Part shown: positions 19,997 to 50,602 of the stretch, in pieces
Layout of the letters: every line of letters starts with the position of its first letter
Numbering within the stretch: the first letter of the stretch is position 1
IMG/VR virus record: IMGVR_UViG_3300022921_000002
Span: 124,001-188,000 of that record
Direction: 5' to 3' (one strand)
Length of the DNA stretch: 64,000 nucleotides
Position numbers and translations under genes: made by a program
The notes under the pieces: model-generated
What the model was told of the DNA's origin: nothing
Databases searched by the model: none
Seen by the model: the letters and a program-made list of their open reading frames with translations, nothing else

Positions 19997-20536
19997 ATGA
20001 GCAACGAGTTGAAAAAATTAACGTGGGATCATCATCAAGCAGCAGAACGGCGGGCATTTGCTCGTAAGCTTTTAAGAGGCGAGTTATCGGACTACGAATA
20101 TTATATATTCCTGGTCTGCCAATGGCACAATTATACACCACTTGAAAATGCTGTTATTATTCCACCTAATCTCAATGCTATATATCGAGCGGACCGTATC
20201 AAAGCTGATATGCAGGAACTCGAAAAACTACACGGATTTGGCCACCCATCGGCATTACCAACATCCGTAAAAGAATACCAAAACCATATTGGTCAACTTA
20301 CCGAATCTGAAAACAATCATGGTTTGCTTGCCCATATGTATACTAGGCATTTTGGTGAACTACACGGTGGACAAATAATCAAAAAGAAAGCACCGGGCTC
20401 AGGTACTATGTATGAGTTTGAAGGTGATAAAGAATTGCTTATCTCAGAGTTTAGAAAACTTCTTGACGATAGCATGGCACCCGAGGCAAAAAAGTGTTTT
20501 GAATTTGCCTCAAAATTATTTGATGAATTGTCATAA
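19997..20536 (+). CDS. hemO: heme oxygenase (Ho1/HemO type)
   Basis: Proximal His in TWDHHQAAE; AHMYTRHFGELHGGQII distal helix; TATAAATA at 19960. Confidence 0.88.
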   Translation: MSNELKKLTWDHHQAAERRAFARKLLRGELSDYEYYIFLVCQWHNYTPLENAVIIPPNLNAIYRADRIKADMQELEKLHGFGHPSALPTSVKEYQNHIGQLTESENNHGLLAHMYTRHFGELHGGQIIKKKAPGSGTMYEFEGDKELLISEFRKLLDDSMAPEAKKCFEFASKLFDELS

Positions 20537-20606
20537 TATAATTGACAATCCAAGTTTTGTGATATAAAATAATACTATAATACAACATATTCTAAGGAGG
20601 AATCAA

Positions 20607-20774
20607 ATGCAAGATAACGCATTAGAAGACATTAACCTTAAACCTAAGAAACGTGCAGATCGACTTTCAAGAAGTATCAGCGCAAGGCGAAGGCGGAAAA
20701 TGTTGAAACAAGTAAGAGAAACGCGCTTACTAAACGCATATGCCAAATTGAAAAGGGCACGCAGAAAGAAATGA
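20607..20774 (+). CDS. small very basic protein, 55 aa
   Basis: Hand-translated MQDNALEDINLKPKKRADRLSRSISARRRRKMLKQVRETRLLNAYAKLKRARRKK; AAGGAGG RBS; ATGA overlap with the next gene. Confidence 0.7.
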   Translation: MQDNALEDINLKPKKRADRLSRSISARRRRKMLKQVRETRLLNAYAKLKRARRKK

Positions 20775-21454
20775 CACCACTATGGGATCGGCTTAACAGC
20801 TATGCTGAATACATATCAAATTCATTTGATAATAAGTTTAAGCGATATGATAACCAAAAATATACTGATGATATGCACTTTCCTGGATGGACTGATACCT
20901 TTTGGAATTCAGATCAAATCTACAAAGCGCATTTGAAAACCATTGTACCAGAAAACGGTAAAGGTTTATGGTTGATGCACGTTAACGTATTTCCAAAAGC
21001 AAATATTGAATTACCTATTCTTGGGTTTGATATTGTTGCCGGTCCCAAAAAGATTACAGGATCATTTATGGACTTTTCACCATTGTTAGGTTTTGCACAT
21101 CCTTACCATGATTATATGGAACGGCGAGTTGCTAACCTAGAATGGAATAAACCACGTGAATTACCACCGTGGGCAAAAGAAATCTTTTCAAGTGATATGC
21201 TTGCGGTTGGTAATATTAATACTGATGATGAGCTTAATCAGTTTATACAAGTGACAACTGATTTGGTAGATTATTATCTCGACAACCTTGATGATAACAC
21301 ATTTTACAGTCGGCGTGAAACAACACCTCTATTAAATAAGTATTGTCAAAATCAAAAATTAAATCCACATTTGCACCGATCCATTTTAGCAATGGGTATA
21401 TCCGAAGAAGATAAAGATGAATATGTAAATAACGTGCTATTCGAGGAGATTTAA
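20771..21454 (+). CDS. pcyX: ferredoxin-dependent bilin reductase (PcyA/PcyX-like)
   Basis: GLWLMH70VNVFP, PILGFD87IVAG, FMDFSP, RELPPWAKEIFS, YCQNQKLNPHL; adjacent to heme oxygenase. Confidence 0.82.
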   Translation: MTPLWDRLNSYAEYISNSFDNKFKRYDNQKYTDDMHFPGWTDTFWNSDQIYKAHLKTIVPENGKGLWLMHVNVFPKANIELPILGFDIVAGPKKITGSFMDFSPLLGFAHPYHDYMERRVANLEWNKPRELPPWAKEIFSSDMLAVGNINTDDELNQFIQVTTDLVDYYLDNLDDNTFYSRRETTPLLNKYCQNQKLNPHLHRSILAMGISEEDKDEYVNNVLFEEI

Positions 21455-22114
21455 ATGGCGTTTTTAGTACATCCCTTGCCACCAGTAAACGTATATGTTA
21501 AAATGGAATATCTATACGATTTGGATTTCGCTGACGACCGAGGATGGGGTAACTTAACTCCTGGCATTTGGATTAGTGTTAAATCAACTCAATCAAAAGC
21601 GTTATATTTTGAAACACTTCTTACAGACTATGGAGCATTATATGATAAATTACCTATATCAGCTTTTGTTTGGAAAGAAGACTTCGATCTTGAAGACCAG
21701 CTTCCACTTGATGTTCTTCAGCTTTGGGATTGTTTTGATTACGACCTTACCGTTATCCAAAAGCCAATCTTGTGTAGGTGTGAGTTTTTTGGAAAAGACA
21801 AAAAGATGCACGCAGGAGAATACGAATTTACCATAGATAATGCTCACAGAGATAACGCATATCTCGATACTAATTTTTCAGAACACGATCCAGAGCACAA
21901 ATCATTTAATGTTATTAGACTTGATAATGGTCAATTCGCTGCTCAACCAAACAACAGAGTTATATGGAGAGACAGTTCATTAACACCTGCTAATTTGAAA
22001 CGACCTGATTTTAAAGTGTGTACTCAAAACTACGCAGTAGAAGATCAACCCAAATGGTCGGTTGGCCACACTGATGAATGGCAATATAAAACAAAAGAGG
22101 AAGAAAACGGTTGA
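21455..22114 (+). CDS. conserved hypothetical protein (marine phage type)
   Basis: 219-aa ORF; LYDKLPISAF, QLWDCF, NGQFAAQPNNRVIW. Confidence 0.75.
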   Translation: MAFLVHPLPPVNVYVKMEYLYDLDFADDRGWGNLTPGIWISVKSTQSKALYFETLLTDYGALYDKLPISAFVWKEDFDLEDQLPLDVLQLWDCFDYDLTVIQKPILCRCEFFGKDKKMHAGEYEFTIDNAHRDNAYLDTNFSEHDPEHKSFNVIRLDNGQFAAQPNNRVIWRDSSLTPANLKRPDFKVCTQNYAVEDQPKWSVGHTDEWQYKTKEEENG

Positions 22115-22270
22115 CAATAAATGGATGTTGTGATAATATTAATATTGTAAGGAATCAAACAATAGCTGAGTTTGATAACCATAGGTATTTAATTACTTTA
22201 CATTATTGTAAGTCTTGCGGGTCTAAAAAGGCCAGCTCAAACATAACTCATATTAAAAAGGAGAAAACAG

Positions 22271-22474
22271 ATGTATGTTAAACACGTACTAGGCGAACGC
22301 AATAAATTGATGTATCGTGCTGAAATTCATAAAGATAATGAAGGAACATATTCTATTCGTTATTTCTCGGAAGCACAAGAAATTAAACGTGAAACTTTTG
22401 AAGGAAAATCTATCCACTATGTCGAGGATGCGGCTGATAATTGGATCAGTGGGATTAAGACATTAAATGGATAG
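22271..22474 (+). CDS. hypothetical protein
   Basis: AAGGAG RBS. Confidence 0.6.
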   Translation: MYVKHVLGERNKLMYRAEIHKDNEGTYSIRYFSEAQEIKRETFEGKSIHYVEDAADNWISGIKTLNG

Positions 22475-22661
22475 CAATAACATACCTGAAATCCGTGGTA
22501 ATACTTATGGTGTTGAAATTCAAATAAAAGATAGACCTTTTGTGAAAATTAATGGAAACATAGTTTATGAGGACAAGAAAGATGTAATGCTTTTTTGGAC
22601 AGCCTATAGAATGGGAAGGGACCATAAGAAAAATGAAATTAGACACGCGTTGGGACTTTAG
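22467..22661 (+). CDS. hypothetical protein
   Basis: Packed between neighbours; 64 aa. Confidence 0.55.
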   Translation: MDSNNIPEIRGNTYGVEIQIKDRPFVKINGNIVYEDKKDVMLFWTAYRMGRDHKKNEIRHALGL

Positions 22662-22665
22662 ACAA

Positions 22666-22905
22666 ATGATTACACCGCCAAGGTCGCCTGAAAAAATCCA
22701 CCATGAAATTGCGGACATGCTGGCCAACGGTGTAAATTATATTGATGCGTTAGTTGAATATGCACGCAAGAATAATCTAGAAATCGAGGCAGTTGCTGAT
22801 ATCGTAAAGAAATCATCAATACTTAAAGAGAAACTTAGATCAGAAGCTGTGCAATTGAGATTGGTTGAAAAAGATGATAAAGACATCACAGAGCTTTGCA
22901 AATGA
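22666..22905 (+). CDS. 33: late transcription coactivator gp33
   Basis: NYIDALVEYARKNNLEIEAVADIVKKS.ILKEKL..EA..L; precedes gp59 and gp32. Confidence 0.85.
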   Translation: MITPPRSPEKIHHEIADMLANGVNYIDALVEYARKNNLEIEAVADIVKKSSILKEKLRSEAVQLRLVEKDDKDITELCK

Positions 22906-23476
22906 GGAAACTTTTCAGCTCTATATAAAATATCTTGCAATGAAAAAACACTTTACCACGGACGGTTATGACTATCAAAAATATCGTGGTAAAGTAAGAG
23001 CCAAATTTGAAACATATCGCACACGTAACGATGTTTTCTTCTTTCACAAATTGTCAACTAAGGATGAGCCAATAAATCAATTGTTGGCTAATATGGTTGT
23101 TAATCCTAATTCATGGATACGTGATATTGTTGAAGACATTGGTGATGAGCGATACGTTGATTGGCGCAAAAAGATGGATGCGTTAAGTTATACTTTTAAA
23201 TCTGATTTGAGTAAACTTGACGATAACTACCAAGCAAATTTTGTAACACCAGACGGACAGCATCCGCATATCTTACGTCTATATTTACAAAAGCAAATAT
23301 CACTTGAGACGTTTACAATAATTACCAATTTATCAAACATTTTTCCTTATTGGGATGATAATTTGGTTGACAAAATCGTTGCTCGTGATATAATTAGATT
23401 ATCCAAGAAATACAAACCGTTCTTGGAAATAAATGAAAAAAAGTTCAAGGATATCATCCGTGATCGGTTTTTCTGA
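22874..23476 (+). CDS. 59: helicase loader gp59
   Basis: YIKYLAMKKHF..DGYDY.KYRGKV; ISLETF; KKYKPFL; synteny. Confidence 0.88.
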   Translation: MIKTSQSFANEETFQLYIKYLAMKKHFTTDGYDYQKYRGKVRAKFETYRTRNDVFFFHKLSTKDEPINQLLANMVVNPNSWIRDIVEDIGDERYVDWRKKMDALSYTFKSDLSKLDDNYQANFVTPDGQHPHILRLYLQKQISLETFTIITNLSNIFPYWDDNLVDKIVARDIIRLSKKYKPFLEINEKKFKDIIRDRFF

Positions 23477-24817: not shown

Positions 24818-24818
24818 T

Positions 24819-31047: not shown

Positions 31048-31226
31048 TGACAACTTTAGTAGCAAACTATGTCTTTTCGCCCTTGTCGGGTTTGTGGTCT
31101 TCACTAGATCGTTATTCGCAAATGATTGGCTACAGCCGAGCGGCAGCGGAGCTCGCAAGAATGGGTATGATAGAGGAATCGAAACGTTGTATGATGGAAA
31201 TCGGGAGATTGCAAAATGACCGGTGA
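31047..31226 (+). CDS. small hypothetical protein
   Basis: ATG at 31047; [14 protein letters not shown]. Confidence 0.65.
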
Positions 31227-31440
31227 TATCGCAACAATGGGTGCCTTAATTGGCGCAGGGCTAGCAACATTCGGAATGGGTGGCGCTGCCATCGGAGTAG
31301 GAATGATTGTTGGTAGTGTACTAAAAGTAATGCCTAAGAAACCAGATACAGGTACAATGTTTGTTGGTATTGCGTTTGCTGAAGCATTAGGAATCTTCGC
31401 ATTTCTCGTAGCGCTTTTGCTAATGTTTGCCGTTGTCTAA
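31216..31440 (+). CDS. atpE: F0 ATP synthase subunit c homologue with altered polar loop
   Basis: [18 protein letters not shown] helix 1; MFVGIAFAE56[16 protein letters not shown] helix 2; GGGAG RBS. Confidence 0.9.
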
Positions 31441-31657: not shown

Positions 31658-31684
31658 AAAGGTGTTCATTAGTTGGGCACCTTT
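31658..31684 (+). terminator. hairpin closing the DUF1127-atpE unit
   Basis: AAAGGTGTTCA-TTAGT-TGGGCACCTTT; TATAAATA at 31649 just upstream. Confidence 0.5.
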
Positions 31685-31705
31685 CATCATTTTAAAGGTT
31701 ATATT

Positions 31706-32347
31706 ATGCCAGTCTTTACAGTTGAAATCAACAATAAAGTAGTTGAGTTTACGCATATACCAAAATGCGGCGGTACATCCGCAAAATGTATGATGCTTGA
31801 AGCATCAGGATTTGATTGGAGAAACTCCCCGGCAAATGATTGGGGATTGCCAATAAGCCAAAGAAAACATCAAAAACAAAATAACAAATTCATGGATCGG
31901 CATGGAAAAGGTAAATTTGGTAACGTAGATTATCGGTTTACTATTATCCGTGATCCTATTAAAAGACTTGTGTCTTGTTATACAAACCGAGTGTTATTTT
32001 ATAATAAGATGAGAAATCGTGGGTGGGATAATTTTGTTGATAACTTAGGTAACTATGCAGCAGGTGATATTTCTCACCATTCTTTTCCAATGACGTATTG
32101 GCTAGGTAACGATCCTAACCGATATGATAAGATCTTTACAGTATCACAGGTTAGCACAGATATGCGTGAATGGTTATCAGAAATTGCAAACACTGATGTA
32201 CCTGCGCTGCAGCGACAAGATGGTGGTAGAGAAAAACAAAGTAAAATTGTTATTACTAAAGATCAGATAACAAGAATTAAAAAATACTATAAAAATGATT
32301 ATGAGAATTGGTGGAATGATAAGGTTGTTCCACAGGAGTTTGTATAA
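31706..32347 (+). CDS. sulfotransferase family 2 protein
   Basis: 5'-PSB HIPKCGGTS; 3'-PB RDPIKRLVSCY. Confidence 0.8.
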   Translation: MPVFTVEINNKVVEFTHIPKCGGTSAKCMMLEASGFDWRNSPANDWGLPISQRKHQKQNNKFMDRHGKGKFGNVDYRFTIIRDPIKRLVSCYTNRVLFYNKMRNRGWDNFVDNLGNYAAGDISHHSFPMTYWLGNDPNRYDKIFTVSQVSTDMREWLSEIANTDVPALQRQDGGREKQSKIVITKDQITRIKKYYKNDYENWWNDKVVPQEFV

Positions 32348-33027
32348 TGTATATCCCAGAAATCAATACTTATTTTGTCCATGTTCCTAAAGCAGGTGGA
32401 ACAAGTGTTGAATTATTCTTTCTTCGTAATGTATGTGGTTATCCTGACTTTCAAGAAAGAAATATGTTTCGGCAATTTATAACAAAATACGGTGGGCGAA
32501 TAAATGCCTCACGGTATCATTTTGGACAACCAACACCTGAAATATTACCTACTGGTGAAACACAGCATTTATCAGCATGGCAATTGAAAGCTTGGAATGA
32601 TAAAGCCTTCACAGGATCTAAATATACATTTGCATTTGTCCGAAATCCTTTTCATAAATTTGTATCTGAGGTTATTTGGAAGCGTGAAAGGCTACCTGGT
32701 AAAGTAAATATGACATTTGAACAGCAGATTAGAGCTATGGAAATGGAATATCAGCGGAATAATATGAAAATACGTACTCCGCATAATGCACCGCAATGGA
32801 AGTTTGTATATGATGAAAAAGATAATCTTATTGTTGATGATGTATTTAGACTCGAGGAAATGGATAAAGCACAAAAGGTTATATCGGAAAAACTCGGCAT
32901 ACCTATAAACTTTGGGCATGAAAATAGAACAGCACGAAAAGATTATAAAGAATATTTGAATGCCAATTTAGTAAAACAACTTAAACCGTTAATTCAAAAA
33001 GATATGGAAGTATTCGGTTATGATTAA
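32347..33027 (+). CDS. sulfotransferase family 2 protein
   Basis: HVPKAGGTS; RNPFHKFVS; FRLEEM. Confidence 0.82.
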   Translation: MYIPEINTYFVHVPKAGGTSVELFFLRNVCGYPDFQERNMFRQFITKYGGRINASRYHFGQPTPEILPTGETQHLSAWQLKAWNDKAFTGSKYTFAFVRNPFHKFVSEVIWKRERLPGKVNMTFEQQIRAMEMEYQRNNMKIRTPHNAPQWKFVYDEKDNLIVDDVFRLEEMDKAQKVISEKLGIPINFGHENRTARKDYKEYLNANLVKQLKPLIQKDMEVFGYD

Positions 33028-33727
33028 AACATTATGGATATATTGGAATACAGGAATTAAAGCAGCACCTCCAATTGTTCATAAATGCGTTGACAGTTGG
33101 AAACACCATAATCCTACATGGAAAATAGTATTACTTGATAATACAAATCTTAGGGATTATTACAAAGGCACACAAAATGGGCGTAGCATTCAGGCATGGT
33201 CTGATGTTGTTCGCATTAACTTACTTAAAGAATACGGCGGAGTATGGGTAGATGCAACCGTTGCTTGTAATAAACCACTTGATAGTTGGTTACCTGCTCA
33301 TGCTAAAACCGGTTTCTTTGCGTTCCGAAAACCAAAACCTGATACCGAAGTTGCAAGTTGGTTTCTATATGCTGATAAAGATAATTGCATTGTGGATCGG
33401 TGGAAATTATTGGTTGATGAATATTGGAAGAACCGCCCAAATATGGATTATCTGTGGTTTCATGGTTTATTTAATAATGTATTAGAAGACCCTGCTTGTC
33501 AGACAATGTGGAACAAAACTAAACCATGGCTGGCTAATCATAAACCGCTTCCTGAAACACCTGACAACCCACATTGGTTTACACCATATAATGCCAGCCG
33601 ATGGACAAAAATAAGAAAACAAGGATTGCCATTAACAGGACCTTGTTATAAATTAGCACATGGAACATCTAGGAGAATGATCCAAGAACCTACTATTATG
33701 AGGATATTTAATTATGAAAGTAAATAA
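33020..33727 (+). CDS. capsular-polysaccharide-synthesis / GT32-like glycosyltransferase
   Basis: IW.YW..G...AP.IV..C..SW; SDVVRINLLKEYGGVWVDAT. Confidence 0.82.
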   Translation: MIKTLWIYWNTGIKAAPPIVHKCVDSWKHHNPTWKIVLLDNTNLRDYYKGTQNGRSIQAWSDVVRINLLKEYGGVWVDATVACNKPLDSWLPAHAKTGFFAFRKPKPDTEVASWFLYADKDNCIVDRWKLLVDEYWKNRPNMDYLWFHGLFNNVLEDPACQTMWNKTKPWLANHKPLPETPDNPHWFTPYNASRWTKIRKQGLPLTGPCYKLAHGTSRRMIQEPTIMRIFNYESK

Positions 33728-34475
33728 GTATTATATAATTTATACTAATGATAACCTATCAAAACAATACGCAAATGATGCTGCCGAGCAATGTAAAAAG
33801 CTTGGAGTAAATTATGAGTTATACGAAGGATGGAAACCACAAGGTGGTCCTGGTCAAATGTGGAGAAAGTTTACCGCTGAAACAGGAATTCCAATCAAAT
33901 CATTTAAAAGAATGATGGTTGGTGCTCATGGTTGTATGGCTTCTCATTTACAATTATGGCAAAGGATTGTTCAGAATAAAGAATGTGCTGTTATATTAGA
34001 ACACGATGGGATGATGCTTCATAAAGTAAAGTTGGATATTCCTGATAACAAAATCGTTGCGTTAGGATACAAATATAGAGAATGGGAAAACTATGACTAT
34101 AAAACCGCAGGTCAACCCGAAAGAATTAAAGATGTGAAATTTCATCCAGGTTCTCATGCGTATGCTATTACACACATTACCGCGCAGAAAATGATTGATG
34201 AAGTAACAAAGGTAGGTGTTACCGAGGCAATTGATAATCGTTGGTTTATGAGCAGTCGGAAAAATTTTACTAAAATACCAATGGCTATTTGTGATCCTAT
34301 AGCAGCAATTGGGTGGTTAAGATTATCAACTATTCAGAAATATAGTGCCACTCATAATAATCATGCCGAAATGTTAGAATCTTTTAAGAACAACTTTAAA
34401 GGTCAGCTAAAGGAATCAATCGTTATACCCAAAGGGTCTGTAAATATTATAAATAGAAACAAAATCAGAGAATAG
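33714..34475 (+). CDS. glycosyltransferase family 25-like
   Basis: GCMASHLQLWQRIV, ILEHD, GSHAYAIT. Confidence 0.75.
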   Translation: MKVNKYYIIYTNDNLSKQYANDAAEQCKKLGVNYELYEGWKPQGGPGQMWRKFTAETGIPIKSFKRMMVGAHGCMASHLQLWQRIVQNKECAVILEHDGMMLHKVKLDIPDNKIVALGYKYREWENYDYKTAGQPERIKDVKFHPGSHAYAITHITAQKMIDEVTKVGVTEAIDNRWFMSSRKNFTKIPMAICDPIAAIGWLRLSTIQKYSATHNNHAEMLESFKNNFKGQLKESIVIPKGSVNIINRNKIRE

Positions 34476-34484
34476 AGGTATCTT

Positions 34485-37400
34485 ATGGCAGACGAAAGCA
34501 ATAAGGACAAAAAGAAAAAGGTTAAGGGATTTAAAGAATTTGATCCTGGAAACTATATTGATATTGAACCTACTATCAATGAAGCAAAAGTAGGCGAGGT
34601 TGTTATTTCTTGGGGACGTATGAACCCTATTACAACTGGGCACGAAAAACTTATCAATAGAGTTTTAAATGTAGCAAAATCAAAGAATGCTATTCCTGCT
34701 GTATTTTTAACACATTCTCAAGATAAAACAAAAAATCCATTGTCATATAATGATAAGATCAAATATGCCGAGGTAGCATTTGGTAAAATCATTAAAAGAT
34801 CAACTGCCAAGACAATCATTCAATTAATGCAGCAGTTACAAAAGAAATTTAAAAAGGTAACTCTCGTTGTTGGTTCTGACCGATATAAAGAGATGGATAC
34901 ATTGCTTAACAAATACAATGGTAAAGAATATAAATTTGATGAAATAGAAGTTGTATCCGCAGGTGCTAGAGATCCTGACGCTGAAGGTGTTAAAGGAATG
35001 TCAGCATCAAAAATGCGTGAGTATGCTGTTTCAGATAATATCAAAAAGTTTACTACAGGATTACCTAGTAAGCTAAAAACAAGCGCGGCCGACATTATGG
35101 CCAGCATTAAAAAGGGAATGGGAATGTCGGAAGAATATAACGAAGATAACTTTATCGAAGAAGATGAATTAGACGAAGCTTTGACTCGACAGCAGCGTAT
35201 TAAACGCGGCCGTCAAATGCGAAGAATGCGTGTTAAAATGAAACGAGGTCGGGAAAAGGCAAAGCGGCGCCGTGCCAATATTGATGTTTTGAAAAGAAGA
35301 TCAAGAAAAGCAGCACGTAATATAATTAAAAAGCGTCTTGCTGGTAATAAACGATATGCTGATATGGAGCCTGCGGAAAAGGAACGTATTGATAAACGCA
35401 TTGAAAAGATTTCAAAACAACGTATTGATAACCTGGCAATTAAATTGTTACCTTCTGTTAAAAAGAAAGAACGTGAGAGATTACAAGCACGTCATAATAA
35501 GAATGAGTCTGTTGATCTGAATGAGATGTGGGGTGCATATGTAACTAAGCGACCACATATGCTTATGGATAAAAACAACAAACCAAAGTTTGATAAACGG
35601 TTTAAGATGTTTAAACCTAAACAAGTTACAGAGATGAATGAGTTTGATATTGAAGATATCGTTGAACTTATGGAATCAGTTGAAAAATTTACCGAAACAA
35701 CAGGTAAATATTACACAGGTGTTGCTAAAAATAAGAAAGATGACCGTGAAGATCATTTTGAACGTAATGCTAAAAAGGCTGATGATGATCCTTCAGCATA
35801 TAGGCCAGCACCAGGTGATAAAGAAGCAAAGACAAAAGAATCAAAGCATACAAAAAAAGCACGAGCGATGGGTTACACTGAAGAATTTGATTTTTTAGGT
35901 GAAGATGCCGCAGGCAAATCATTAGCTGATAAAGCAAAGAAATCTGACATGCCTGCAGGGATTTTACGTAAAGTATATAACCGTGGTGTTGCCGCATGGA
36001 AAACAGGTCACCGCCCAGGAACAACACCTGAACAATGGGGACATGCTCGAGTAAATTCATTTATTACTAAATCCTCTGGTACATGGGGTAAGGCTGATAA
36101 AGACCTTGCTGCAAAGGTTAATGAATCAGTAGAAACAGTTAATGAAGTTAGGAGAAACGCTATGGCTGCCAAGCCTAAGAACACTAAAGCAGAACGTGAG
36201 AGTAGACTAGCACAGAATATGAAAAAATTAAAGGATATGCGTAAATCTGATAAGTCTTGGGGTAAATCAAGCGCATTTGATTATCACGAGGAAGTAGAAC
36301 TTGACGAATTAACAGCAGCTGAGAAAAAGCTAGTAAATCAAATGTATGATAAAAAAGGCAACCTCACACCACATGGTAAAAAAGTAATGAACCACGGTAA
36401 GAAAAAAGGTGATAAAGGTTTTGTTGAATCGTTAGATGATAAGTTTGAAGCATTCATCTCACTTAATGAAGCCGCAACGCCTCAAATGAAAAAGGCAGCT
36501 GCAAGTATCGAAGCATATGCAAAGAAAAGCGGTGGCATTGATAAAGCAGACTTTATGAAAGCAGCAAAGATGCTATCATCTGGTAATGCTGGTATAAAAT
36601 TCGTTAAATTTGTAGATGATCTTGATACAGAACCACGCGAATGGTTAATCACTAATCTTGCTAAGACTATGGGTAAACAAACAGTTGAAAAAATGTTTAA
36701 AGTTAAAATCCGTGAAGAAGTAGAACTAGATGAAGCCGAAATGAGCCTATATGATAAAATAAAGGCAGCAAGAGCAAACCCATCACCAGACAAGCCTGCA
36801 AGAGGTCGTGGATCAAAAAATCGTAATCCAAAAACTTATGACCCACGCAAAGCACTAGACAAAGAAGATGATCGTCTTCAAGGTATGGTAAAGAAAAAAT
36901 TGAAAAAAGAAGAGTTTGAACTTGATGAAGATCTTACACACCAGACAGTAAAGCCACCGAATCATACTAAAAAGTTTTCTGGGAAAGATTCTCGTGACAC
37001 ACAAGACACATCGGCGAATGAGTGGGATGCGCCAGGTAATAAGCGTCATACTGTAACGAGTAGTCAAGCAGATGCTCATGATAAAACTGCTGCACATCAC
37101 AATGAGGTTGCGGATGCTCATACAAAGGCAGGCGAAAAATCTTCTAGTCCAACTTTACAAAGATTGCATCACCAAGCCTCAGTCCATCATAAGAAGGCAG
37201 CAGAAGCACACTTTAATGCTTCTCATTCTAGTTCAGGTGCAGATAAAGATGGTTCTATTCAAAAAAAGGCAAAGGATCTGCATATGGCATACCATCTAAC
37301 TATGCATGCTAACAAGATGTCTCAAGAAGTAAGAAATAAGGGTTCTAAAGCAAAGCGTATCCTTGAAGAAGTAGAAGAGCTTGATGAAGATGCTAAAATG

Positions 37401-37748
37401 AAAAAGCAATCTGATGATAACCTAAAAAGTTTACATAAGCAATTCAAAGGTCAAGATCAAAAAATGCCATCAACTCAGCATATGATGAAGCGTATCACTA
37501 AAGAAATGAAACGCCGTAATATGGGTGAGTCTGAAGAAGCAGCAAAGTTAGCATCTGTTGCTAACGGTGGTGTTCAGGATAAAGAAGATAAATTTAGAAA
37601 TGCATTAAACCGTGTTCGTAATAAAAAATCAATGAAAGATGAAAGCTCTTGTGGATCATCAAAGAAAAGAAATGAAGAAGCTGGCGCAGGCGAAGAAGGT
37701 ACAGCTAAATTAGTTAAAAGACTAAAGAAGGATACACCTAATGCATAG
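34485..37748 (+). CDS. 1087-aa virion polyprotein: N-terminal cytidylyltransferase-like (HxGH) domain plus modules separated by L/I-x-E sites
   Basis: GRMNPITTGHEKL, LVVGSDR, SAGARDPD, MSASKMR; repeated EEVELDE linkers; TATAAATA at 34448. Confidence 0.8.
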   Translation: MADESNKDKKKKVKGFKEFDPGNYIDIEPTINEAKVGEVVISWGRMNPITTGHEKLINRVLNVAKSKNAIPAVFLTHSQDKTKNPLSYNDKIKYAEVAFGKIIKRSTAKTIIQLMQQLQKKFKKVTLVVGSDRYKEMDTLLNKYNGKEYKFDEIEVVSAGARDPDAEGVKGMSASKMREYAVSDNIKKFTTGLPSKLKTSAADIMASIKKGMGMSEEYNEDNFIEEDELDEALTRQQRIKRGRQMRRMRVKMKRGREKAKRRRANIDVLKRRSRKAARNIIKKRLAGNKRYADMEPAEKERIDKRIEKISKQRIDNLAIKLLPSVKKKERERLQARHNKNESVDLNEMWGAYVTKRPHMLMDKNNKPKFDKRFKMFKPKQVTEMNEFDIEDIVELMESVEKFTETTGKYYTGVAKNKKDDREDHFERNAKKADDDPSAYRPAPGDKEAKTKESKHTKKARAMGYTEEFDFLGEDAAGKSLADKAKKSDMPAGILRKVYNRGVAAWKTGHRPGTTPEQWGHARVNSFITKSSGTWGKADKDLAAKVNESVETVNEVRRNAMAAKPKNTKAERESRLAQNMKKLKDMRKSDKSWGKSSAFDYHEEVELDELTAAEKKLVNQMYDKKGNLTPHGKKVMNHGKKKGDKGFVESLDDKFEAFISLNEAATPQMKKAAASIEAYAKKSGGIDKADFMKAAKMLSSGNAGIKFVKFVDDLDTEPREWLITNLAKTMGKQTVEKMFKVKIREEVELDEAEMSLYDKIKAARANPSPDKPARGRGSKNRNPKTYDPRKALDKEDDRLQGMVKKKLKKEEFELDEDLTHQTVKPPNHTKKFSGKDSRDTQDTSANEWDAPGNKRHTVTSSQADAHDKTAAHHNEVADAHTKAGEKSSSPTLQRLHHQASVHHKKAAEAHFNASHSSSGADKDGSIQKKAKDLHMAYHLTMHANKMSQEVRNKGSKAKRILEEVEELDEDAKMKKQSDDNLKSLHKQFKGQDQKMPSTQHMMKRITKEMKRRNMGESEEAAKLASVANGGVQDKEDKFRNALNRVRNKKSMKDESSCGSSKKRNEEAGAGEEGTAKLVKRLKKDTPNA
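36288..37388 (+). repeat. dispersed EE(V/F)E(E)LDE-coding linker repeats
   Basis: GAGGAAGTAGAACTTGACGAA 36288, GAAGAAGTAGAACTAGATGAA 36714, GAAGAGTTTGAACTTGATGAA 36909, GAAGAAGTAGAAGAGCTTGATGAA 37365. Confidence 0.8.
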
Positions 37749-45168: not shown

Positions 45169-45178
45169 AGGAACTAAA

Positions 45179-45847: not shown

Positions 45848-45998
45848 ATATTTTTATATACCGGAAAATGGTTTCTGGAATGATAAATATGAGTACCATG
45901 GCAATCTATGGTAAGAATAATCCCTATTAGCACAAAATATGCCACATCCTCAAGGTGCGGTTTTTCTGTCCTTAACACATACGAAAGAGGTTCACCGA

Positions 45999-47273
45999 AT
46001 GTTTGACTCCCGAGCACTACCTAAAGATATAGTAAATTACGTTATTAAACGTGACGGATCAACAAAGAGTTTTGATTCAAGTAAGATTGCATATGCGGTT
46101 AATAATGCTATGAAAGCAATTGGTATTCGAGCAAAATCCTTACCTGGTGAAATTGCATTTGAAGTTACAAAAAGTATTAACGAAGATGCTGAGGATGTTA
46201 TTGTTGATGTTGATACAGTACACAAAACAGTTGAGAACGTGATGATGGATATGGGATTACACGACTTAGCTCGTGAGTATATCCTTTTTCGTTTTAACAA
46301 CCAACCTGACATTTTCCGTAAACGTACAAACCTTAAACCATATGAGTATCCGCAACTCGTTGAGTATACTGATGCTATCCGACATTCATATTGGGTACAT
46401 ACCGAGTTTAATTATTCGTCCGATATCCAGGATATGAAAGTGCGTATGACTGAGTCTGAGGTTGATATTGTTAAAAAAGCAATGCTTGCTATCTCACAAA
46501 TTGAGGTACAGGTAAAAACATTTTGGGCAAAGATTGGTGATAAATTTCCTAAGCCTGAAGTACAAGGTGTTGGTGTAACATTTGGTGAATCAGAAGTACG
46601 CCATGCCGATGCCTATTCTAATCTCATTGAAATTATGGGTCTCAATGATGAATTTGAAAAGGTTGTAGAAATTCCTGCAATGAAAAAACGCATTGCCTAT
46701 CTTGAGCAATCAATTGCAGCACCTGTTGATAATAAGGATTACTTCCATAAGATTATCCTATTCTCAATGTTTGTTGAAAACGTATCACTGTTTTCACAAT
46801 TTCTAATTATGATGGCGTTTAATAAACATAGAAATTTACTTAAAGGTATTTCTAATGCTGTTGAGGCAACATCAAAAGAAGAAGATATCCATGCTCGTTT
46901 CGGATTTGAGCTTGTAAACATTATCCGTGAAGAAAATCCTGATTGGTTTGACAAAGATAGTATTGCTGAAGTCAACCGCCTGTGCCGTGATGCATTTAAA
47001 GCAGAGTCTGCAATTGTTGATTGGATCTATGGTGATGCCGATCTCGATTTTCTACCTAAAGCGACTGTCAAAGAATTCCTAAAGCATCGTTTCAATCAAT
47101 CATTAAAGGCAATTGATATGAAGCCTTTATATGATGTTGACGAGGAAGCCGTAAAGAGTACTGATTGGTTTGTTGAAGAAATTTTGAGTACAAAGAATAT
47201 TGACTTCTTTGTTAAACGCTCAACTGCATATTCAAAGAAAACCAAGGCATTCACCGAAGATGATTTATTTTAA
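45999..47273 (+). CDS. nrdB: class I ribonucleotide reductase beta subunit with N-terminal ATP cone
   Basis: VIKRDGSTKSFDSSKI ATP cone; SQIEVQVK, ESEVRHADAY, FVEN, KEEDIH. Confidence 0.92.
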   Translation: MFDSRALPKDIVNYVIKRDGSTKSFDSSKIAYAVNNAMKAIGIRAKSLPGEIAFEVTKSINEDAEDVIVDVDTVHKTVENVMMDMGLHDLAREYILFRFNNQPDIFRKRTNLKPYEYPQLVEYTDAIRHSYWVHTEFNYSSDIQDMKVRMTESEVDIVKKAMLAISQIEVQVKTFWAKIGDKFPKPEVQGVGVTFGESEVRHADAYSNLIEIMGLNDEFEKVVEIPAMKKRIAYLEQSIAAPVDNKDYFHKIILFSMFVENVSLFSQFLIMMAFNKHRNLLKGISNAVEATSKEEDIHARFGFELVNIIREENPDWFDKDSIAEVNRLCRDAFKAESAIVDWIYGDADLDFLPKATVKEFLKHRFNQSLKAIDMKPLYDVDEEAVKSTDWFVEEILSTKNIDFFVKRSTAYSKKTKAFTEDDLF

Positions 47274-47285
47274 AAGGAAAACACT

Positions 47286-48941
47286 ATGAGAGATTTTTAT
47301 TGGCTAAACGAAGACTCAAGGACATTTTTATCAAGAGGTTATTTGAGTAAAGGTGAAACAGCTAAGCAACGAATTAGAGATATTGCTGATAAAGCTGAAG
47401 AGTACTTGGATATCAAAGGATTTAGTGACAAGTTTTATGGGTATATGAGTAAAGGTTATTATTCATTAGCGTCACCTGTGTGGGCAAATTATGGTAAAGA
47501 ACGTGGTTTGCCTGTATCTTGTTTTGGATCATATATTGATGATAGTATGCAATCAATTTTATTTGGGCATGCTGAAAATGGAATGCTAATGAAAAACGGT
47601 GGTGGCACGTCAGGTTACTTTGGTGCTGTCCGTGGGCGAGGTGCTGAAATCACAGATCAAGGTGAGTCGTCAGGTTCAGTACATTTTATGCAGATGTATG
47701 ATACATTGGCATCAGTTGTATCACAAGGTTCTGTCCGTCGTGGTTTCTTTGCAGCATATCAAGATATTGAACACCCCGATGCTGATGAGTTCCTTGACAT
47801 TGCAACAGAAGGTAATCCTATTCAAGGGTTAACAACAGGCATTACTGTTTCCGATAAGTTCATTAAAGAAATGAAAGATGGTGATCCACAGAAACGCGCA
47901 TTGTGGGCAAAAGTTTTACAGCGCCGTTCTGAAGTTGGTTTTCCATATATTCTGTATTCTGATAATGTAAACAATGGCCGTCCTGATGTTTATAAAGATA
48001 AGGATATGAAAGTACACGCATCTAATATGTGTGCTGAAATCGCATTACCGTCAAGCGCCGAAGAAACATTTACTTGTGTTCTATCATCACTAAATTTATT
48101 ACATTGGGATGAGATTAAAGAAACCGATGCAATTGAAACTTTGGTTATGTTCCTTGATACTGTATGTCAAGAATTCATTAATAAGACTGAAGGTCAAATT
48201 TATATGAAACGTGCTCGTGACTTTGCTATGAACCATCGGGCATTAGGTGCAGGTGTACTAGGTTGGCATTCCTATTTGCAATCAAAGATGATTGCTTTTG
48301 AATCAAAAGAAGCAGCACAGCTCAATGTTGAAATTGCTAAAACATTCCATGATAGATCATACGCGGCATCTGCTGAACTTGCGGACAAACTTGGTGAACC
48401 ACCTTTGCTAAAAGGTTATGGCCGTCGTAATTCAACAACAATGGCAATTGCTCCGACTAAATCATCAAGCTTTATTTTAGGCCAAGTATCACAATCAATT
48501 GAACCTGAGTTTAGTAACTGTTATGTTAAAGACTTGGCAAAAATGAAAGTGACAATTAAGAACCCGTATCTTTTGAAACTGTTAAAGAAAAAAGATCAGG
48601 ATAAATCAGAGGTTTGGGAATCAATTCGTAATGCTGATGGATCAGTACAACATTTGATCTTTTTGTCTGAGGAAGAAAAAGAAGTATTCAAAACATTCTC
48701 AGAAATCAATCCATACACAATTATTGACCAGGCTGCTATTCGTCAACAGTATATTGACCAATCACAAAGTTTAAACTTGATGCTTGATCCTGACCTTTCA
48801 GTTAAAGAAATCAATGCGTTGTACCTATATGCTCATGAGATGGGTGTTAAAAGTTTGTATTATAGTTATTCTATGTCAGCAGCACAATCATTAACACGGA
48901 AACGAGTTTCATCAATGGAGTGCGCAGCCTGCGAAGCATAA
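47286..48941 (+). CDS. nrdA: class I ribonucleotide reductase alpha subunit, no ATP cone
   Basis: PVSCF, SNMCAEI, CVLSS, AIAPT..SS, KSLYY, C-terminal CAACEA. Confidence 0.95.
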   Translation: MRDFYWLNEDSRTFLSRGYLSKGETAKQRIRDIADKAEEYLDIKGFSDKFYGYMSKGYYSLASPVWANYGKERGLPVSCFGSYIDDSMQSILFGHAENGMLMKNGGGTSGYFGAVRGRGAEITDQGESSGSVHFMQMYDTLASVVSQGSVRRGFFAAYQDIEHPDADEFLDIATEGNPIQGLTTGITVSDKFIKEMKDGDPQKRALWAKVLQRRSEVGFPYILYSDNVNNGRPDVYKDKDMKVHASNMCAEIALPSSAEETFTCVLSSLNLLHWDEIKETDAIETLVMFLDTVCQEFINKTEGQIYMKRARDFAMNHRALGAGVLGWHSYLQSKMIAFESKEAAQLNVEIAKTFHDRSYAASAELADKLGEPPLLKGYGRRNSTTMAIAPTKSSSFILGQVSQSIEPEFSNCYVKDLAKMKVTIKNPYLLKLLKKKDQDKSEVWESIRNADGSVQHLIFLSEEEKEVFKTFSEINPYTIIDQAAIRQQYIDQSQSLNLMLDPDLSVKEINALYLYAHEMGVKSLYYSYSMSAAQSLTRKRVSSMECAACEA

Positions 48942-48944
48942 ATT

Positions 48945-50141
48945 ATGGAATATATGAAATTTTTTAAAGACACGGTTGCATCATTTAGAAGCGACGGAAG
49001 ATATCGAGTATTTAATGATATTATCCGTGAAAAGGGTCAGTTTCCTAGGGCTATTTGGTATGGGAAATATGCACCAAAGAATATTGTTAATTGGTGCTCA
49101 AATGATTATTTGGGTATGGGTCAAAACCAATATGTCATAGATGCTATGCATACTGCATTAGATCAAACAGGTTCAGGTTCCGGCGGTACGAGAAATATCG
49201 GCGGAACCTCAGTTTTCCATGTAACACTTGAACGTGAAATTGCAACACTACACCAACGTGAAAACGCATTACTGTTTAGTAGTGCATACGTTGCCAATGA
49301 GTGGGCTCTAATTGCTCTTTCACGCATCATCCCAAACATTTGCTTTATATCTGATAATAAAAACCATGCCTCAATCATTATGGGAGTAAAGCACAGCCGT
49401 GCACCTAAAATGATTTTTAAGCATAATGATATGGCAGATCTCGAGAAATGTTTAAAGGCAGCAAAAAAGAATAAGCAAATTCCTTGCGTATTGTTTGAGT
49501 CCGTATATTCAATGGACGGTGATGTTGCGCCTATTAAAGAAATCGTTGAGTTATCACATAAATATAACGCAATGACTTATATAGATGAAGTCCATGCGGT
49601 TGGTTTGTATGGTCCTACAGGTGCAGGTTATTGTGAACATTTAAATTTATATTCCGATGATATTGATATTATCAACGGCACGTTAGGAAAAGCATATGGG
49701 GTACAAGGCGGGTATATTTCAGGTAAGCAAGAAGTTATTGATGCGATTAGATTGGTTGCATCAGGGTTCATATTCACCACCTCCATGTCACCTGTTATAT
49801 GTGCTGGGGCACTCGCCAGTATAAAATATCTCAAAGACCATTCTTGTCTAAGAGATCAACAACAAGAACGAGTAAAAAAGCTCAGACAAATGTTAGAAGA
49901 AGCAGGATTGAATATACATCCTAATGCTTGTACTCACATTATCCCAGTAATGATTAATGATGCCTTTAAATGTAAAGAAGCATCGGATAGATTACTAAAC
50001 GAATTCGGTATATACATTCAACCGATTAATTCACCAACAGTAGAGGCAGGTACCGAAAGGTTACGTATTGCTCCTACACCATACCATACCGATTTGATGA
50101 TGGTGGAATTAGTCGAAGCGCTGAAAGAAGTATTGAAATGA
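48945..50141 (+). CDS. hemA: 5-aminolevulinate synthase (PLP-dependent, C4 pathway)
   Basis: [60 protein letters not shown]. Confidence 0.93.
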
Positions 50142-50182
50142 ATCAATTAGAAAATGCCTTCTTCAGTAAAAAGGAAAAAACT

Positions 50183-50602
50183 ATGAGTAAAGTAAAAAAG
50201 GCATTTTGGTTTTGCCTAGGAATTATTTTGGTAGGTGTGGCATATCTTGGTGTATTACTACCCGGTCTACCTTGGTCAACACCAATTCTAGGTGCAACAT
50301 TCTGTTTTGCCAAATCAAGTGACAGACTGCATAATTGGATTATGAATCATCCACGGTTCGGTCCATTTGTTAAAAACTGGGGTACATACCGTGTATATCC
50401 AACAGCGGCTAAATGGTTGATGGTTGCCGTAATGAGTACATCCTTGGCATTTATGTGGTTTGGTACAGGAAACGAAAAAGCAACATTATATCTGTTTATT
50501 ACTTTTGCCTTAATTGTTACGTGGGCGTGGCGTTATCCAGGATCACAAGAAATTGCCGAAAAAAGAATTGCCGAAGGTAAAAAGATTGGTTGGCTAAAGT
50601 AA
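50183..50602 (+). CDS. ybaN: YbaN/DUF454 membrane protein
   Basis: LG.LLPGLP.STP.L.A.FCFAKSS.RLH.W...HP.FGP....W. Confidence 0.85.
   Translation: MSKVKKAFWFCLGIILVGVAYLGVLLPGLPWSTPILGATFCFAKSSDRLHNWIMNHPRFGPFVKNWGTYRVYPTAAKWLMVAVMSTSLAFMWFGTGNEKATLYLFITFALIVTWAWRYPGSQEIAEKRIAEGKKIGWLK

What the first reader, a model, noticed from the sequence alone, without database searches (positions are those of the whole stretch)
19997..50602. Distributed tetrapyrrole-to-bilin route: ALA synthase, heme oxygenase, bilin reductase and YbaN in a phage of a non-cyanobacterial host
Seen: hemA (48945), ybaN directly after it, and hemO plus pcyX-like at 19997-21454. Known: ALAS is the committed entry step of the C4 pathway; HO plus a ferredoxin-dependent bilin reductase make reduced bilins; hemO-pcyX cassettes are known from putative alphaproteobacterial phages with unknown purpose; YbaN often lies in heme-utilisation loci. 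Inference: the phage pushes flux in at the top and drains heme at the bottom, so the bilin or the released iron is needed during infection. No bilin acceptor is evident in the window.
Basis: partly seen in the sequence, partly recalled or inferred. Interest (0 to 1): 0.72.

Follow-up and report, generated by a model that had tools for sequence, protein, structure and literature searches.

The report
Phage heme-making and heme-breaking genes
A large marine T4-like phage, probably of an alphaproteobacterium, carries one gene pair that starts heme synthesis and another that breaks heme down; this combination was published in 2024, so the main new detail is a small membrane protein that almost always travels with the heme-starting gene.

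Summary

The window belongs to a 221-kb T4-like phage genome from salt-marsh metagenomes. It has an alphaproteobacterial-type tmRNA and no psbA, so a non-cyanobacterial host is likely.

The core idea is already published. Wegner et al. 2024 (PMC11480375) describe viral alaS with hemO and pcyA/X as whole, 'broken' or partial cassettes, and showed that one viral ALAS is active.

Co-occurrence does not support one obligate route. ALAS-YbaN and hemO-FDBR are separate modules at fixed but different genome positions, and each occurs without the other in large contigs.

Three details are absent from that paper's text and held supplements:
- YbaN follows ALAS in 43 of 46 informative viral loci, across four different gene contexts.
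- This bilin reductase clade has an invariant Lys where PcyA has Glu76 and PcyX has Asp.
- A divergent ALA dehydratase occurs in a strain variant and beside ALAS in a related contig.

I found no plant-type ferredoxin, bilin acceptor or bilin lyase in the whole genome.

The parts
19997..20536 (+). Compact heme oxygenase (hemO), 179 aa
   Evidence: PF01126, E 6e-22. Proximal His and distal G..GG motif align with C. diphtheriae HmuO. 32% identical to the Pelagibacter phage Mosig HO. Found with the FDBR in 74 of 80 related viral loci; most of the six without it are cut by a contig end just upstream of the FDBR.
20607..20774 (+). Small Arg/Lys-rich ORF (55 aa) between hemO and the FDBR; its stop overlaps the FDBR start
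   Evidence: ORF list. No family match. Present only in the 10 closest of 80 related loci. Function unknown; probably not part of the pathway.
20771..21454 (+). PcyX-like ferredoxin-dependent bilin reductase with Lys56 at the PcyA-Glu76 / PcyX-Asp position
   Evidence: PF05996, E 8e-18. Best PDB relative is PcyX 5OWG (E 3.9e-39, about 34% identity by my count of the printed alignment) against PcyA at 58 bits. 33% identical to Mosig. His70, Asp87 and the NPH motif match PcyX. Lys56 is present in 81 of 82 aligned sequences; the only one with Asp is Mosig. Residue roles are from PMC13446030.
21455..22114 (+). Conserved marine T4-like phage protein labelled 'PurM' or 'ferredoxin' in databases; neighbour of the FDBR, not shown to belong to the pathway
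   Evidence: phrog_3704, E 4e-98. 75-78% identical to cyanomyophage genes. Present in 32 of 80 FDBR loci. No invariant Cys in a 40-sequence alignment. All-beta model (pLDDT 86.7) with only weak Tudor/SH3-like matches.
45939..48941 (+). Class I ribonucleotide reductase genes (nrdB with ATP-cone, then nrdA) directly upstream of ALAS
   Evidence: PF03477+PF00268 and PF02867/TIGR02510. The nrdA stop lies 3 nt before the ALAS start. No convincing terminator between nrdA and ybaN.
48945..50141 (+). Viral 5-aminolevulinate synthase (valaS/hemA), 398 aa
   Evidence: TIGR01821, 559 bits against a cut-off of 338.6. 432 and 404 bits to solved bacterial ALAS 7X98 and 2BWN. PLP Lys249 is invariant. Rc-ALAS His342 aligns to Lys342, and there is no C-terminal Cys, because the protein ends at residue 398. 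62-100% identical to 55 viral loci, against at most 53% to cellular ALAS found.
50138..50602 (+). DUF454/YbaN-family inner-membrane protein, translationally coupled to ALAS (ATGA overlap); an alternative start at Met16 has an AAGGA box upstream
   Evidence: PF04304, 94 bits. The model (pLDDT 84) matches only the E. coli YbaN model, TM 0.57-0.70. ALAS lies directly upstream in 43 of 46 informative viral YbaN loci. YbaN lies 0-2.3 kb downstream in 39 of 45 informative ALAS loci. A viral-only C-terminal tail RYPGS..E..RR..AG.KIGWLK is present.

Best explanation
The window holds two separately inherited auxiliary metabolic modules of a T4-like marine or salt-marsh myophage whose host is probably an alphaproteobacterium.

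Module 1 is nrdB-nrdA-alaS-ybaN. Its ALAS lacks both residues used for heme feedback inhibition in bacterial ALAS. I infer that it keeps 5-aminolevulinate, and so heme and other tetrapyrroles, flowing in the infected cell. The YbaN-family membrane protein is its conserved partner and probably acts in iron or heme homeostasis at the inner membrane (inferred).

Module 2 is hemO-FDBR, just upstream of the gp59-gp32 replication genes. It should open heme to biliverdin, Fe2+ and CO. It should then reduce biliverdin with host ferredoxin to a reduced bilin, most likely phycoerythrobilin or a dihydrobiliverdin. Phycocyanobilin is unlikely, because the Glu needed for 18-vinyl reduction is replaced by Lys.

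I think the most likely benefit of module 2 is iron release for phage iron enzymes such as the RNR small subunit, with the reductase removing biliverdin so that the oxygenase keeps turning over. In genomes with both modules, ALAS can replace the heme that is consumed, but the modules are not an obligate unit.

Shown here: gene identities, conserved residues, synteny and distribution. Inferred: activities, product, expression timing and physiological purpose.
For: Identities and residues.

Prior experimental support for the kind: one viral ALAS complements an E. coli ALA auxotroph, and many viral ALAS lack His342/Cys400 (PMC11480375). Here His342 aligns to Lys and the C-terminal Cys is absent.

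The modules sit at fixed but different positions:
- hemO-FDBR lies upstream of Trans_coact-gp59-gp32 in 75-77 of 80 loci.
- ALAS-YbaN lies after the RNR genes.

The modules are distributed independently. Both occur about 25-28 kb apart in the window genome and in two other contigs (G001, G025); a fourth contig (G023) also carries both.

A biosynthetic role for ALAS is supported by a related contig that carries ALA dehydratase 2 kb from ALAS (L234).

An iron theme surrounds ALAS-YbaN. In other lineages a ferritin/Dps-like gene or a 2OG-Fe(II) oxygenase lies between or beside ALAS and YbaN. E. coli ybaN is in the Fur regulon (PMC7157518). A DUF454 gene is induced by iron starvation in Avibacterium (PMC7970244).

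Host evidence: an alpha-type tmRNA and no psbA.
Against: - Nothing from this genome has been assayed.
- The Lys56 change at a catalytic-site position means the reductase product is unknown and could differ from PcyX.
- Most comparison contigs are fragments (6-43% complete), so some absences may be due to truncation. Only two large contigs (73% and 91% complete) carry real weight.
- YbaN also occurs without ALAS in three loci, which represent two phages. ALAS occurs without YbaN in six informative loci. The link is therefore strong but not absolute, and part of it reflects shared ancestry.
- The stretch is present in RNA libraries, but that does not prove transcription.
- The host is not identified.
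- The iron-release purpose is inference only.
Confidence: 0.6

Rival explanations
1. The four genes form one distributed route. ALAS pushes flux into heme so that HO and the reductase can make a reduced bilin, and that bilin is itself the needed product (chromophore, signal or antioxidant) for an acceptor not yet recognised.
For: Both modules co-reside in this genome and in at least three other contigs; in two of these the spacing is the same, about 25-28 kb. True three-gene cassettes exist in other phages and in Bradyrhizobium ORS278, where they feed a phytochrome (PMC11480375). The reductase is conserved with intact His/Asp catalytic residues in more than 80 loci. This suggests that the bilin step itself matters.
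Against: Each module occurs without the other in the two largest comparison contigs. No HO or FDBR lies within 10 kb of any of 55 ALAS loci. The whole genome has no phycobiliprotein/globin, GAF, CpeT, CpeS or Fer2 family match. The only conserved neighbour, at 21455-22114, is a general marine-phage protein present in 32 of 80 loci.
Confidence: 0.2
2. Classical cyanophage case. The host is a cyanobacterium, and the HO and reductase keep phycobilisome pigments supplied during infection.
For: The phage belongs to the marine T4-like group. The gene at 21455-22114 is 75-78% identical to cyanomyophage genes, and the best DNA polymerase matches are cyanophages.
Against: No psbA/psbD, phycobilisome or bilin-lyase genes are found. 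The tmRNA is of the alphaproteobacterial type, scoring 106.7 bits against a gathering score of 50. ALAS is the Shemin enzyme, which cyanobacteria do not use (established knowledge). The DNA polymerase is only 44% identical to cyanophages.
Confidence: 0.04
3. The genes are passengers. They are recently captured host genes or an assembly chimera with no role in infection.
For: The genome is a metagenomic assembly. A strain variant differs upstream of pstS (L006), which shows local mosaicism.
Against: The same genes sit in the same phage context in dozens of independent assemblies at 62-100% identity, with catalytic residues kept. The viral ALAS is at most 53% identical to the nearest cellular ALAS found. 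Five relatives of those candidate hosts lack DUF454. The genes share strand and tight spacing with T4-like core genes.
Confidence: 0.04

Closest known systems
Viral Shemin-pathway gene valaS with hemO and pcyA/X: whole, 'broken' or partial cassettes (Wegner et al. 2024, Nat Commun 15:8783, PMC11480375)
   Same: Same three enzymes in aquatic T4-like phage contigs. hemO and FDBR sit together with ALAS elsewhere on the contig. The ALAS lacks the heme-feedback residues. An alphaproteobacterial host is suspected.
   Different: This contig and its sequence motifs are not in that paper's held supplements. Here ALAS is 28 kb from hemO-FDBR. The paper does not mention the DUF454/YbaN partner, ALA dehydratase or the tmRNA. 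Its marine FDBRs are Mosig-like (motif GLWMAH), whereas this one is about 33% identical to Mosig and carries Lys56.
PhiHemO-PhiPcyX cassette of uncultured oceanic phages; PcyX_EBK42635, PDB 5OWG (Ledermann et al. 2016, 2018, cited)
   Same: Adjacent hemO-FDBR pair. The FDBR's best solved relative is PcyX. It shares the His, the Asp and the NPH (Pro) signature positions.
   Different: Only about 34% identity. PcyX has Asp at the PcyA-Glu76 position and this clade has an invariant Lys. The product is therefore untested.
Pelagibacter phage Mosig EXVC030M (MT647606)
   Same: A T4-like phage of an alphaproteobacterium with adjacent hemO-pcyX.
   Different: Mosig is 141 kb. Its cassette sits beside 2OG-Fe(II) oxygenases, a putative ferrochelatase and neck genes. 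No ALAS or YbaN relative was found in any cultured-phage record. HO is 32% and FDBR 33% identical. The window genome has no ferrochelatase.
Bradyrhizobium sp. ORS278 hemO-pcyA-alaS island next to the phytochrome gene bphP (as described in PMC11480375)
   Same: ALAS, HO and an AX-clade FDBR occur in one alphaproteobacterial genetic context.
   Different: There the three genes are contiguous and serve a neighbouring phytochrome. No GAF or phytochrome gene is present in this phage.
E. coli inner-membrane protein YbaN (DUF454, P0AAR5)
   Same: Same Pfam family and predicted fold, at 28% identity and TM 0.57-0.70. E. coli ybaN is Fur-regulated (PMC7157518), which fits an iron link.
   Different: The viral protein scores below the NCBIfam equivalog cut-off, 63.8 against 163 bits. 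It has a viral-only C-terminal tail. It is tied to ALAS, which was not seen in the cellular genomes sampled.

Membership tests
5-aminolevulinate synthase (TIGR01821; alpha-oxoamine synthase) | Score above the curated equivalog cut-off, and higher than for the paralogues KBL, BioF and SPT | tested here: met
   559.3 bits against a cut-off of 338.55. The next family, KBL, scores 320 bits, below its own cut-off. Solved ALAS proteins are the top PDB hits.
5-aminolevulinate synthase (TIGR01821; alpha-oxoamine synthase) | PLP-binding lysine (R. capsulatus K248) and surrounding catalytic motifs | tested here: met
   GTLGKAYG with K249 aligns to GTLAKAYG of 2BWN. K249, H141, D214 and H217 are invariant in 23 viral and bacterial sequences.
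Viral ALAS (vAlaS) as described by Wegner et al. 2024 | Loss of one or both heme-feedback residues (Rc His342, Cys400) | tested here: met
   Rc His342 aligns with Lys342. The protein ends at residue 398 with no C-terminal Cys.
Viral ALAS (vAlaS) as described by Wegner et al. 2024 | Enzyme activity (glycine + succinyl-CoA to ALA) | not testable with these tools
   Shown only for the freshwater CB_2 enzyme (PMC11480375).
Heme oxygenase (PF01126) | Family score above cut-off, proximal His and distal-helix Gly motif | tested here: met
   78.8 bits against a cut-off of 23. The His in TWDHHQAAE aligns to His20 of HmuO, and HFGELHGGQ aligns to YLGDLSGGQ.
PcyX (phage phycoerythrobilin synthase of the PcyA/PcyX 'AX' clade) | FDBR family membership, closer to PcyX than to PcyA, PebS, PebA or PebB | tested here: met
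   PF05996 at 65.4 bits. PcyX 5OWG scores 138 bits against 58 bits for PcyA. PebS is not matched at E<0.01.
PcyX (phage phycoerythrobilin synthase of the PcyA/PcyX 'AX' clade) | Equivalents of PcyA His88 and Asp105, and Pro at the Asp220 position | tested here: met
   His70 and Asp87 are invariant in 82 sequences. The NPH motif aligns with NPH of PcyX and NDK of PcyA. The positions are from Table 2 of PMC13446030.
PcyX (phage phycoerythrobilin synthase of the PcyA/PcyX 'AX' clade) | Asp at the PcyA-Glu76 position | tested here: not met
   Lys56 is present in 81 of 82 sequences; only Mosig has Asp. I therefore call it PcyX-like and do not file it as a PcyX.
PcyX (phage phycoerythrobilin synthase of the PcyA/PcyX 'AX' clade) | Four-electron reduction of biliverdin to phycoerythrobilin | not testable with these tools
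   Needs an enzyme assay with HPLC of the products.
PcyA (phycocyanobilin:ferredoxin oxidoreductase) | Glu76, essential for 18-vinyl reduction; equivalog score | tested here: not met
   Lys is at that position. NF002760 scores 91 bits against a cut-off of 206.
DUF454 / YbaN | Pfam family score and predicted four-helix membrane fold like E. coli YbaN | tested here: met
   PF04304 at 94.3 bits against a cut-off of 35.1. Model pLDDT is 84. The only significant fold matches are YbaN models.
DUF454 / YbaN | Equivalog of E. coli YbaN (NF007818) | tested here: not met
   63.8 bits against a cut-off of 163. 28% identity.
[quoted passage not shown] | The three genes adjacent | tested here: not met
   ALAS lies 27.5 kb downstream of the FDBR. 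This corresponds to the paper's 'broken cassette'.
T4-like marine myophage (Kyanoviridae-like) | T4 replication and recombination core genes | tested here: met
   gp43 polymerase, gp59, gp32, UvsX, gp41-like helicase, UvsW, UvsY, gp46/47-like genes and topoisomerase II are found by Pfam. The polymerase is 44% identical to cyanomyophages.
T4-like cyanophage | psbA/psbD photosystem genes | tested here: not met
   PF00124 has no match in the 221-kb genome, which CheckV rates as 100% complete.

The most novel reading that the evidence does not exclude
The viral DUF454/YbaN protein is a dedicated functional partner of phage ALAS. It would be an inner-membrane factor in ALA, porphyrin, heme or iron handling. 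That would give the first functional handle on the widespread, uncharacterised YbaN family. In addition, the Lys56 bilin reductases would form a new functional subclade of the PcyA/PcyX lineage, with a product or mechanism different from both.
Probability: 0.3. Interest if true: 0.55.

Novelty: new member of a known kind. Interest (0 to 1): 0.35.

Why it matters
Phage-encoded heme synthesis and breakdown genes in non-photosynthetic hosts are a recently recognised but still unexplained class of auxiliary metabolic genes, so this genome adds a near-complete example.

It also gives three testable leads:
- A conserved ALAS-YbaN pair could reveal what the Fur-regulated YbaN family does.
- An abundant bilin-reductase clade has a changed catalytic-site residue.
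- The heme-making and heme-breaking modules are inherited separately. This argues against a single bilin-producing route and points towards iron and cofactor economy in the infected cell.

Tried and rejected
- **Near-identical DNA in cultured phages:** none found. No cultured phage carries a comparable ALAS or YbaN; the hits there are BioF/KBL paralogues or bacterial-looking records.
- **ALAS-YbaN complex prediction** (ALAS dimer plus YbaN): no verdict, score 0.00. This is not evidence either way.
- **Fold search of the YbaN model against solved structures:** nothing significant.
- **The ORF after the FDBR (21455-22114) as a 'ferredoxin' or bilin acceptor:** rejected. It has no invariant Cys. 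It has an all-beta fold with only weak Tudor/SH3-like matches. It is a general marine T4-like phage gene, 75-78% identical in cyanophages, and occurs in only 32 of 80 FDBR loci.
- **Whole-genome family searches, all negative:** Fer2, ALAD, ferrochelatase, phycobilisome/globin, GAF, CpeT, CpeS, CobS_N and 2OG-FeII_Oxy_3. 4Fe-4S ferredoxins and flavodoxins were not searched.
- **YbaN next to heme genes in bacteria:** not seen beside ALAS in 11 alphaproteobacterial ALAS loci. Not found in five genomes holding the closest cellular ALAS. The neighbours in 10 alphaproteobacterial YbaN loci were unrelated, apart from one HemN-like gene. Other bacterial classes were not sampled.
- **Promoter and terminator scans:** at background level, except one strong hairpin at 19927-19950 that separates the porin-like gene from hemO.
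- **RNA libraries:** four salt-marsh metatranscriptome libraries hold nrdB-nrdA-alaS-ybaN at 99-100% identity. These are assembled contigs without strand information, so transcription is not shown.


Full report
**What is there.**
- The ORF at 19997-20536 is a compact heme oxygenase (PF01126, E 6e-22).
- The ORF at 20771-21454 is a ferredoxin-dependent bilin reductase, FDBR (PF05996, E 8e-18).
- The ORF at 48945-50141 is a 5-aminolevulinate synthase, ALAS (TIGR01821, 559 bits against a cut-off of 338.6).
- The ORF at 50138-50602 is a DUF454/YbaN membrane protein (PF04304, 94 bits).

ALAS starts 3 nt after the stop of the RNR large-subunit gene, and its stop overlaps the ybaN start as ATGA. A second possible ybaN start at Met16 has an AAGGA box upstream.

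Functional residues are kept:
- The oxygenase has the proximal His and the distal G..GG motif.
- ALAS has the PLP lysine.
- The reductase has the equivalents of PcyA His88 and Asp105.

**The genome.** The window is bases 124001-188000 of a 221,447-bp virus record from a JGI metagenome, and CheckV rates the record as 100% complete. It is a T4-like myophage. By Pfam it has gp43 polymerase, gp59, gp32, UvsX, a gp41-like helicase, UvsW, UvsY, gp46/47-like genes and topoisomerase II. No cultured phage is close: megablast finds nothing, and the polymerase is only 44% identical to cyanomyophages. Near-identical contigs come from many assemblies. Salt-marsh metatranscriptome libraries also hold the stretch.

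**Host.** The genome has no psbA/psbD, phycobilisome or bilin-lyase genes. It carries a two-piece tmRNA at 18768-19076. Its best clan match is the alphaproteobacterial model, at 106.7 bits against a gathering score of 50, and its tag is ANDNYKPSGFALAA. ALAS is the Shemin enzyme of Alphaproteobacteria. The nearest cellular ALAS found are about 53% identical, from OCS116 and Rhodobiaceae genomes. A non-cyanobacterial host, probably an alphaproteobacterium, is therefore likely but not proven.

**Prior art.** Wegner et al. 2024 (Nat Commun 15:8783, PMC11480375) describe exactly this kind of system.
- They report viral alaS alone, in a three-gene cassette with hemO and pcyA/X, or as a 'broken cassette'.
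- The contigs are marine and cluster with pelagimyophages, or come from freshwater phages.
- They showed that one viral ALAS is active.
- They noted that many viral ALAS lack the heme-feedback residues His342 and Cys400.
- They left the purpose of the catabolic genes open, with iron supply or a phytochrome or globin acceptor as ideas.

In the window protein, Rc His342 aligns to Lys342 and there is no C-terminal Cys. It therefore fits their viral ALAS. This contig and its sequence motifs are absent from the paper's held supplements, so this is a further member.

- Of 80 viral loci with a related reductase (69-100% identity), 74 have the oxygenase next to it; most of the six without it are cut by a contig end just upstream of the FDBR. 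In 75-77 of the 80 loci the pair sits at the same place, upstream of a small ORF, Trans_coact, gp59 and gp32.
- Of 55 viral ALAS loci (62-100% identity), none has an oxygenase or reductase within 10 kb, even with Mosig queries at a relaxed threshold.
- Across whole contigs, a 156-kb contig (73% complete) has ALAS and YbaN but no reductase. A 183-kb contig (91% complete) has hemO-FDBR and YbaN but no ALAS.
- The window genome and two other contigs carry both modules about 25-28 kb apart, and a fourth contig also carries both.

So there are two modules, each at its own fixed position and each gained or lost on its own. They are compatible but not obligately linked. Most comparison contigs are fragments, so this rests mainly on the two large ones.

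**ALAS-YbaN pair.** This is the most robust new detail.
- Starting from YbaN, 43 of 46 informative viral loci have ALAS directly upstream.
- Starting from ALAS, 39 of 45 informative loci have YbaN 0-2.3 kb downstream.

The pair holds in at least four different contexts:
- nrdB-nrdA-ALAS-YbaN-RmlB, as in the window;
- nrdA-nrdB-ALAS-YbaN, next to a different type of RNR;
- nrdB(Grx)-ALAS-2OG-Fe(II) oxygenase-unknown-YbaN;
- ALAS facing a minus-strand run of ferritin/Dps-like, unknown and YbaN genes.

Part of the signal is shared ancestry, and there are exceptions on both sides. In cells the link is not seen:
- There is no DUF454 near ALAS in 11 alphaproteobacterial loci.
- There is none in five genomes with the closest ALAS.
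- DUF454 occurs in 48 of 201 sampled alphaproteobacterial genomes.
- Its neighbours in 10 of these are unrelated, apart from one HemN-like gene.

The viral proteins share a C-terminal tail that the bacterial ones lack. The model matches only E. coli YbaN. Published data tie the family to iron. E. coli ybaN is in the Fur regulon (PMC7157518), and a DUF454 gene is induced by iron starvation in Avibacterium (PMC7970244). Neither the main text nor the 11 held supplements of the 2024 paper mention DUF454 or YbaN. I infer a role in iron, heme or porphyrin handling at the membrane. The mechanism is unknown.

**The reductase.** Its best solved relative is PcyX 5OWG (E 3.9e-39), well ahead of PcyA. It is 33% identical to the Mosig enzyme. 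Of the four signature positions tabulated in PMC13446030, three match PcyX: His, Asp and Pro in the NPH motif. The fourth does not. This position is Glu76 in PcyA, where it is essential for 18-vinyl reduction, and Asp in PcyX. Here it is Lys56. The Lys is present in 81 of 82 aligned sequences, and only Mosig has Asp. The paper's FDBR file contains the Mosig-type motif 18 times and the window-type motifs not at all. I therefore call it PcyX-like. It is not PcyA, and it is not a tested PcyX. Phycocyanobilin is an unlikely product. Phycoerythrobilin or a dihydrobiliverdin is plausible, because PebS makes phycoerythrobilin with Ala at this position.

**Other tetrapyrrole genes, donors and acceptors.** The genome has no ALA dehydratase, ferrochelatase, plant-type ferredoxin, phycobiliprotein/globin, GAF, CpeT, CpeS or CobS_N match. 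The ORF directly after the reductase (21455-22114) is labelled 'ferredoxin' or 'PurM' in public records. It has no conserved Cys, has an all-beta fold unlike either, and is a general marine-phage gene. I do not count it as part of the pathway.

A strain variant (L006) is 99.6% identical to the genome over 16 kb, and upstream of that stretch it carries a divergent 266-aa ALA dehydratase (PF00490, 114 bits). A related contig has the same dehydratase 2 kb from an ALAS. This favours a genuinely biosynthetic role for the ALAS module.

**Most likely working.** ALAS, freed from heme feedback, sustains tetrapyrrole supply in the infected cell. It is probably expressed with the nucleotide-metabolism genes it abuts. 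The oxygenase and reductase open heme and remove biliverdin, which releases iron. With both modules present, the heme consumed can be replaced. The iron purpose is my inference. It fits the di-iron RNR genes next to ALAS and the ferritin and 2OG-Fe(II) oxygenase genes found beside ALAS-YbaN in relatives. A bilin-centred purpose remains possible (20%).

**Verdict.** This is a new member of a known kind, with three modest new leads: the YbaN partner, the Lys56 reductase clade and phage ALA dehydratase.

Noticed in passing
window 18768-19076 (+) (ARAGORN: 18772-19124): A phage-encoded two-piece (permuted) tmRNA of the alphaproteobacterial type (RF01849, 106.7 bits; RF04321, 108.8 bits), with tag peptide ANDNYKPSGFALAA. 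It is useful as a host marker.
   Followed up: partly
window 19106-19900 (+): A 264-aa protein with a signal peptide and a C-terminal Phe lies directly upstream of hemO. Language-model features place it nearest Gram-negative porins (Porin_4, score 0.95), but it has no Pfam match. It is present in 37 of 80 FDBR loci. A strong terminator-like hairpin at 19927-19950 separates it from hemO.
   Followed up: partly
window 21455-22114 (+): The gene widely annotated as 'PurM' or 'ferredoxin' in cyanophage records (phrog_3704) has neither fold. The model is all-beta with weak Tudor/SH3-like matches and there is no conserved Cys. These database labels look wrong.
   Followed up: yes
L006:290-1090 (-); L234:10001-10798 and 12743-13951: A divergent, short (266 aa) ALA dehydratase (PF00490, 114 bits) occurs in a strain variant, upstream of the 16 kb that are 99.6% identical to this phage. 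It also occurs 2 kb from an ALAS in another viral contig. Only three IMG/VR contigs carry it. It is not mentioned in the 2024 paper.
   Followed up: partly
L057:11183-11623 (-), L057:12233-12652 (-); L041:11188-11793 (+): In related ALAS lineages, a ferritin/Dps-like gene (PF00210, E 2e-18) or a 2OG-Fe(II) oxygenase (PF13759, E 5e-23) lies between or beside ALAS and YbaN. This gives an iron theme around the pair.
   Followed up: partly
window 31673-37748 and 50819-61440 (+): There are two clusters of sugar-modifying genes. They include two sulfotransferases, several glycosyltransferases, an RmlB-like dehydratase, a UDP-glucose dehydrogenase-like gene, a carbamoyltransferase, a cytidylyltransferase and a phosphomannomutase. 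They suggest elaborate glycan or DNA modification by the phage.
   Followed up: no
window 31216-31440 (+), approximately (L003:20446-20670): A 74-aa ORF matches the ATP synthase c-subunit family (PF00137). It lies downstream of a YjiS-like (DUF1127) small ORF, with a 59-aa ORF between them.
   Followed up: no
L238:20275-20691 (variant contig from the same sample as L006): A strain variant carries a MotA/ExbB-like gene shortly after pstS (a 76-aa ORF lies between them); in the window a different ORF follows pstS. This shows strain-level mosaicism near the hemO region.
   Followed up: no
genome G000, last 100 bases and position ~4086: The last 100 bases of the 221-kb record recur about 4.1 kb from its start; the last 200 bases do not. 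This may be an internal repeat or an assembly feature. No terminal repeat was found.
   Followed up: no
L067 and L075 (FZLS01000039.1, FZLS01000005.1): Two contigs of a 'Rhodobacteraceae bacterium Water_Bin34' genome bin carry ALAS (71-73% identity), YbaN and the RmlB-like gene in the phage arrangement. They are probably phage contigs binned with a bacterium. [quoted passage not shown]
   Followed up: partly
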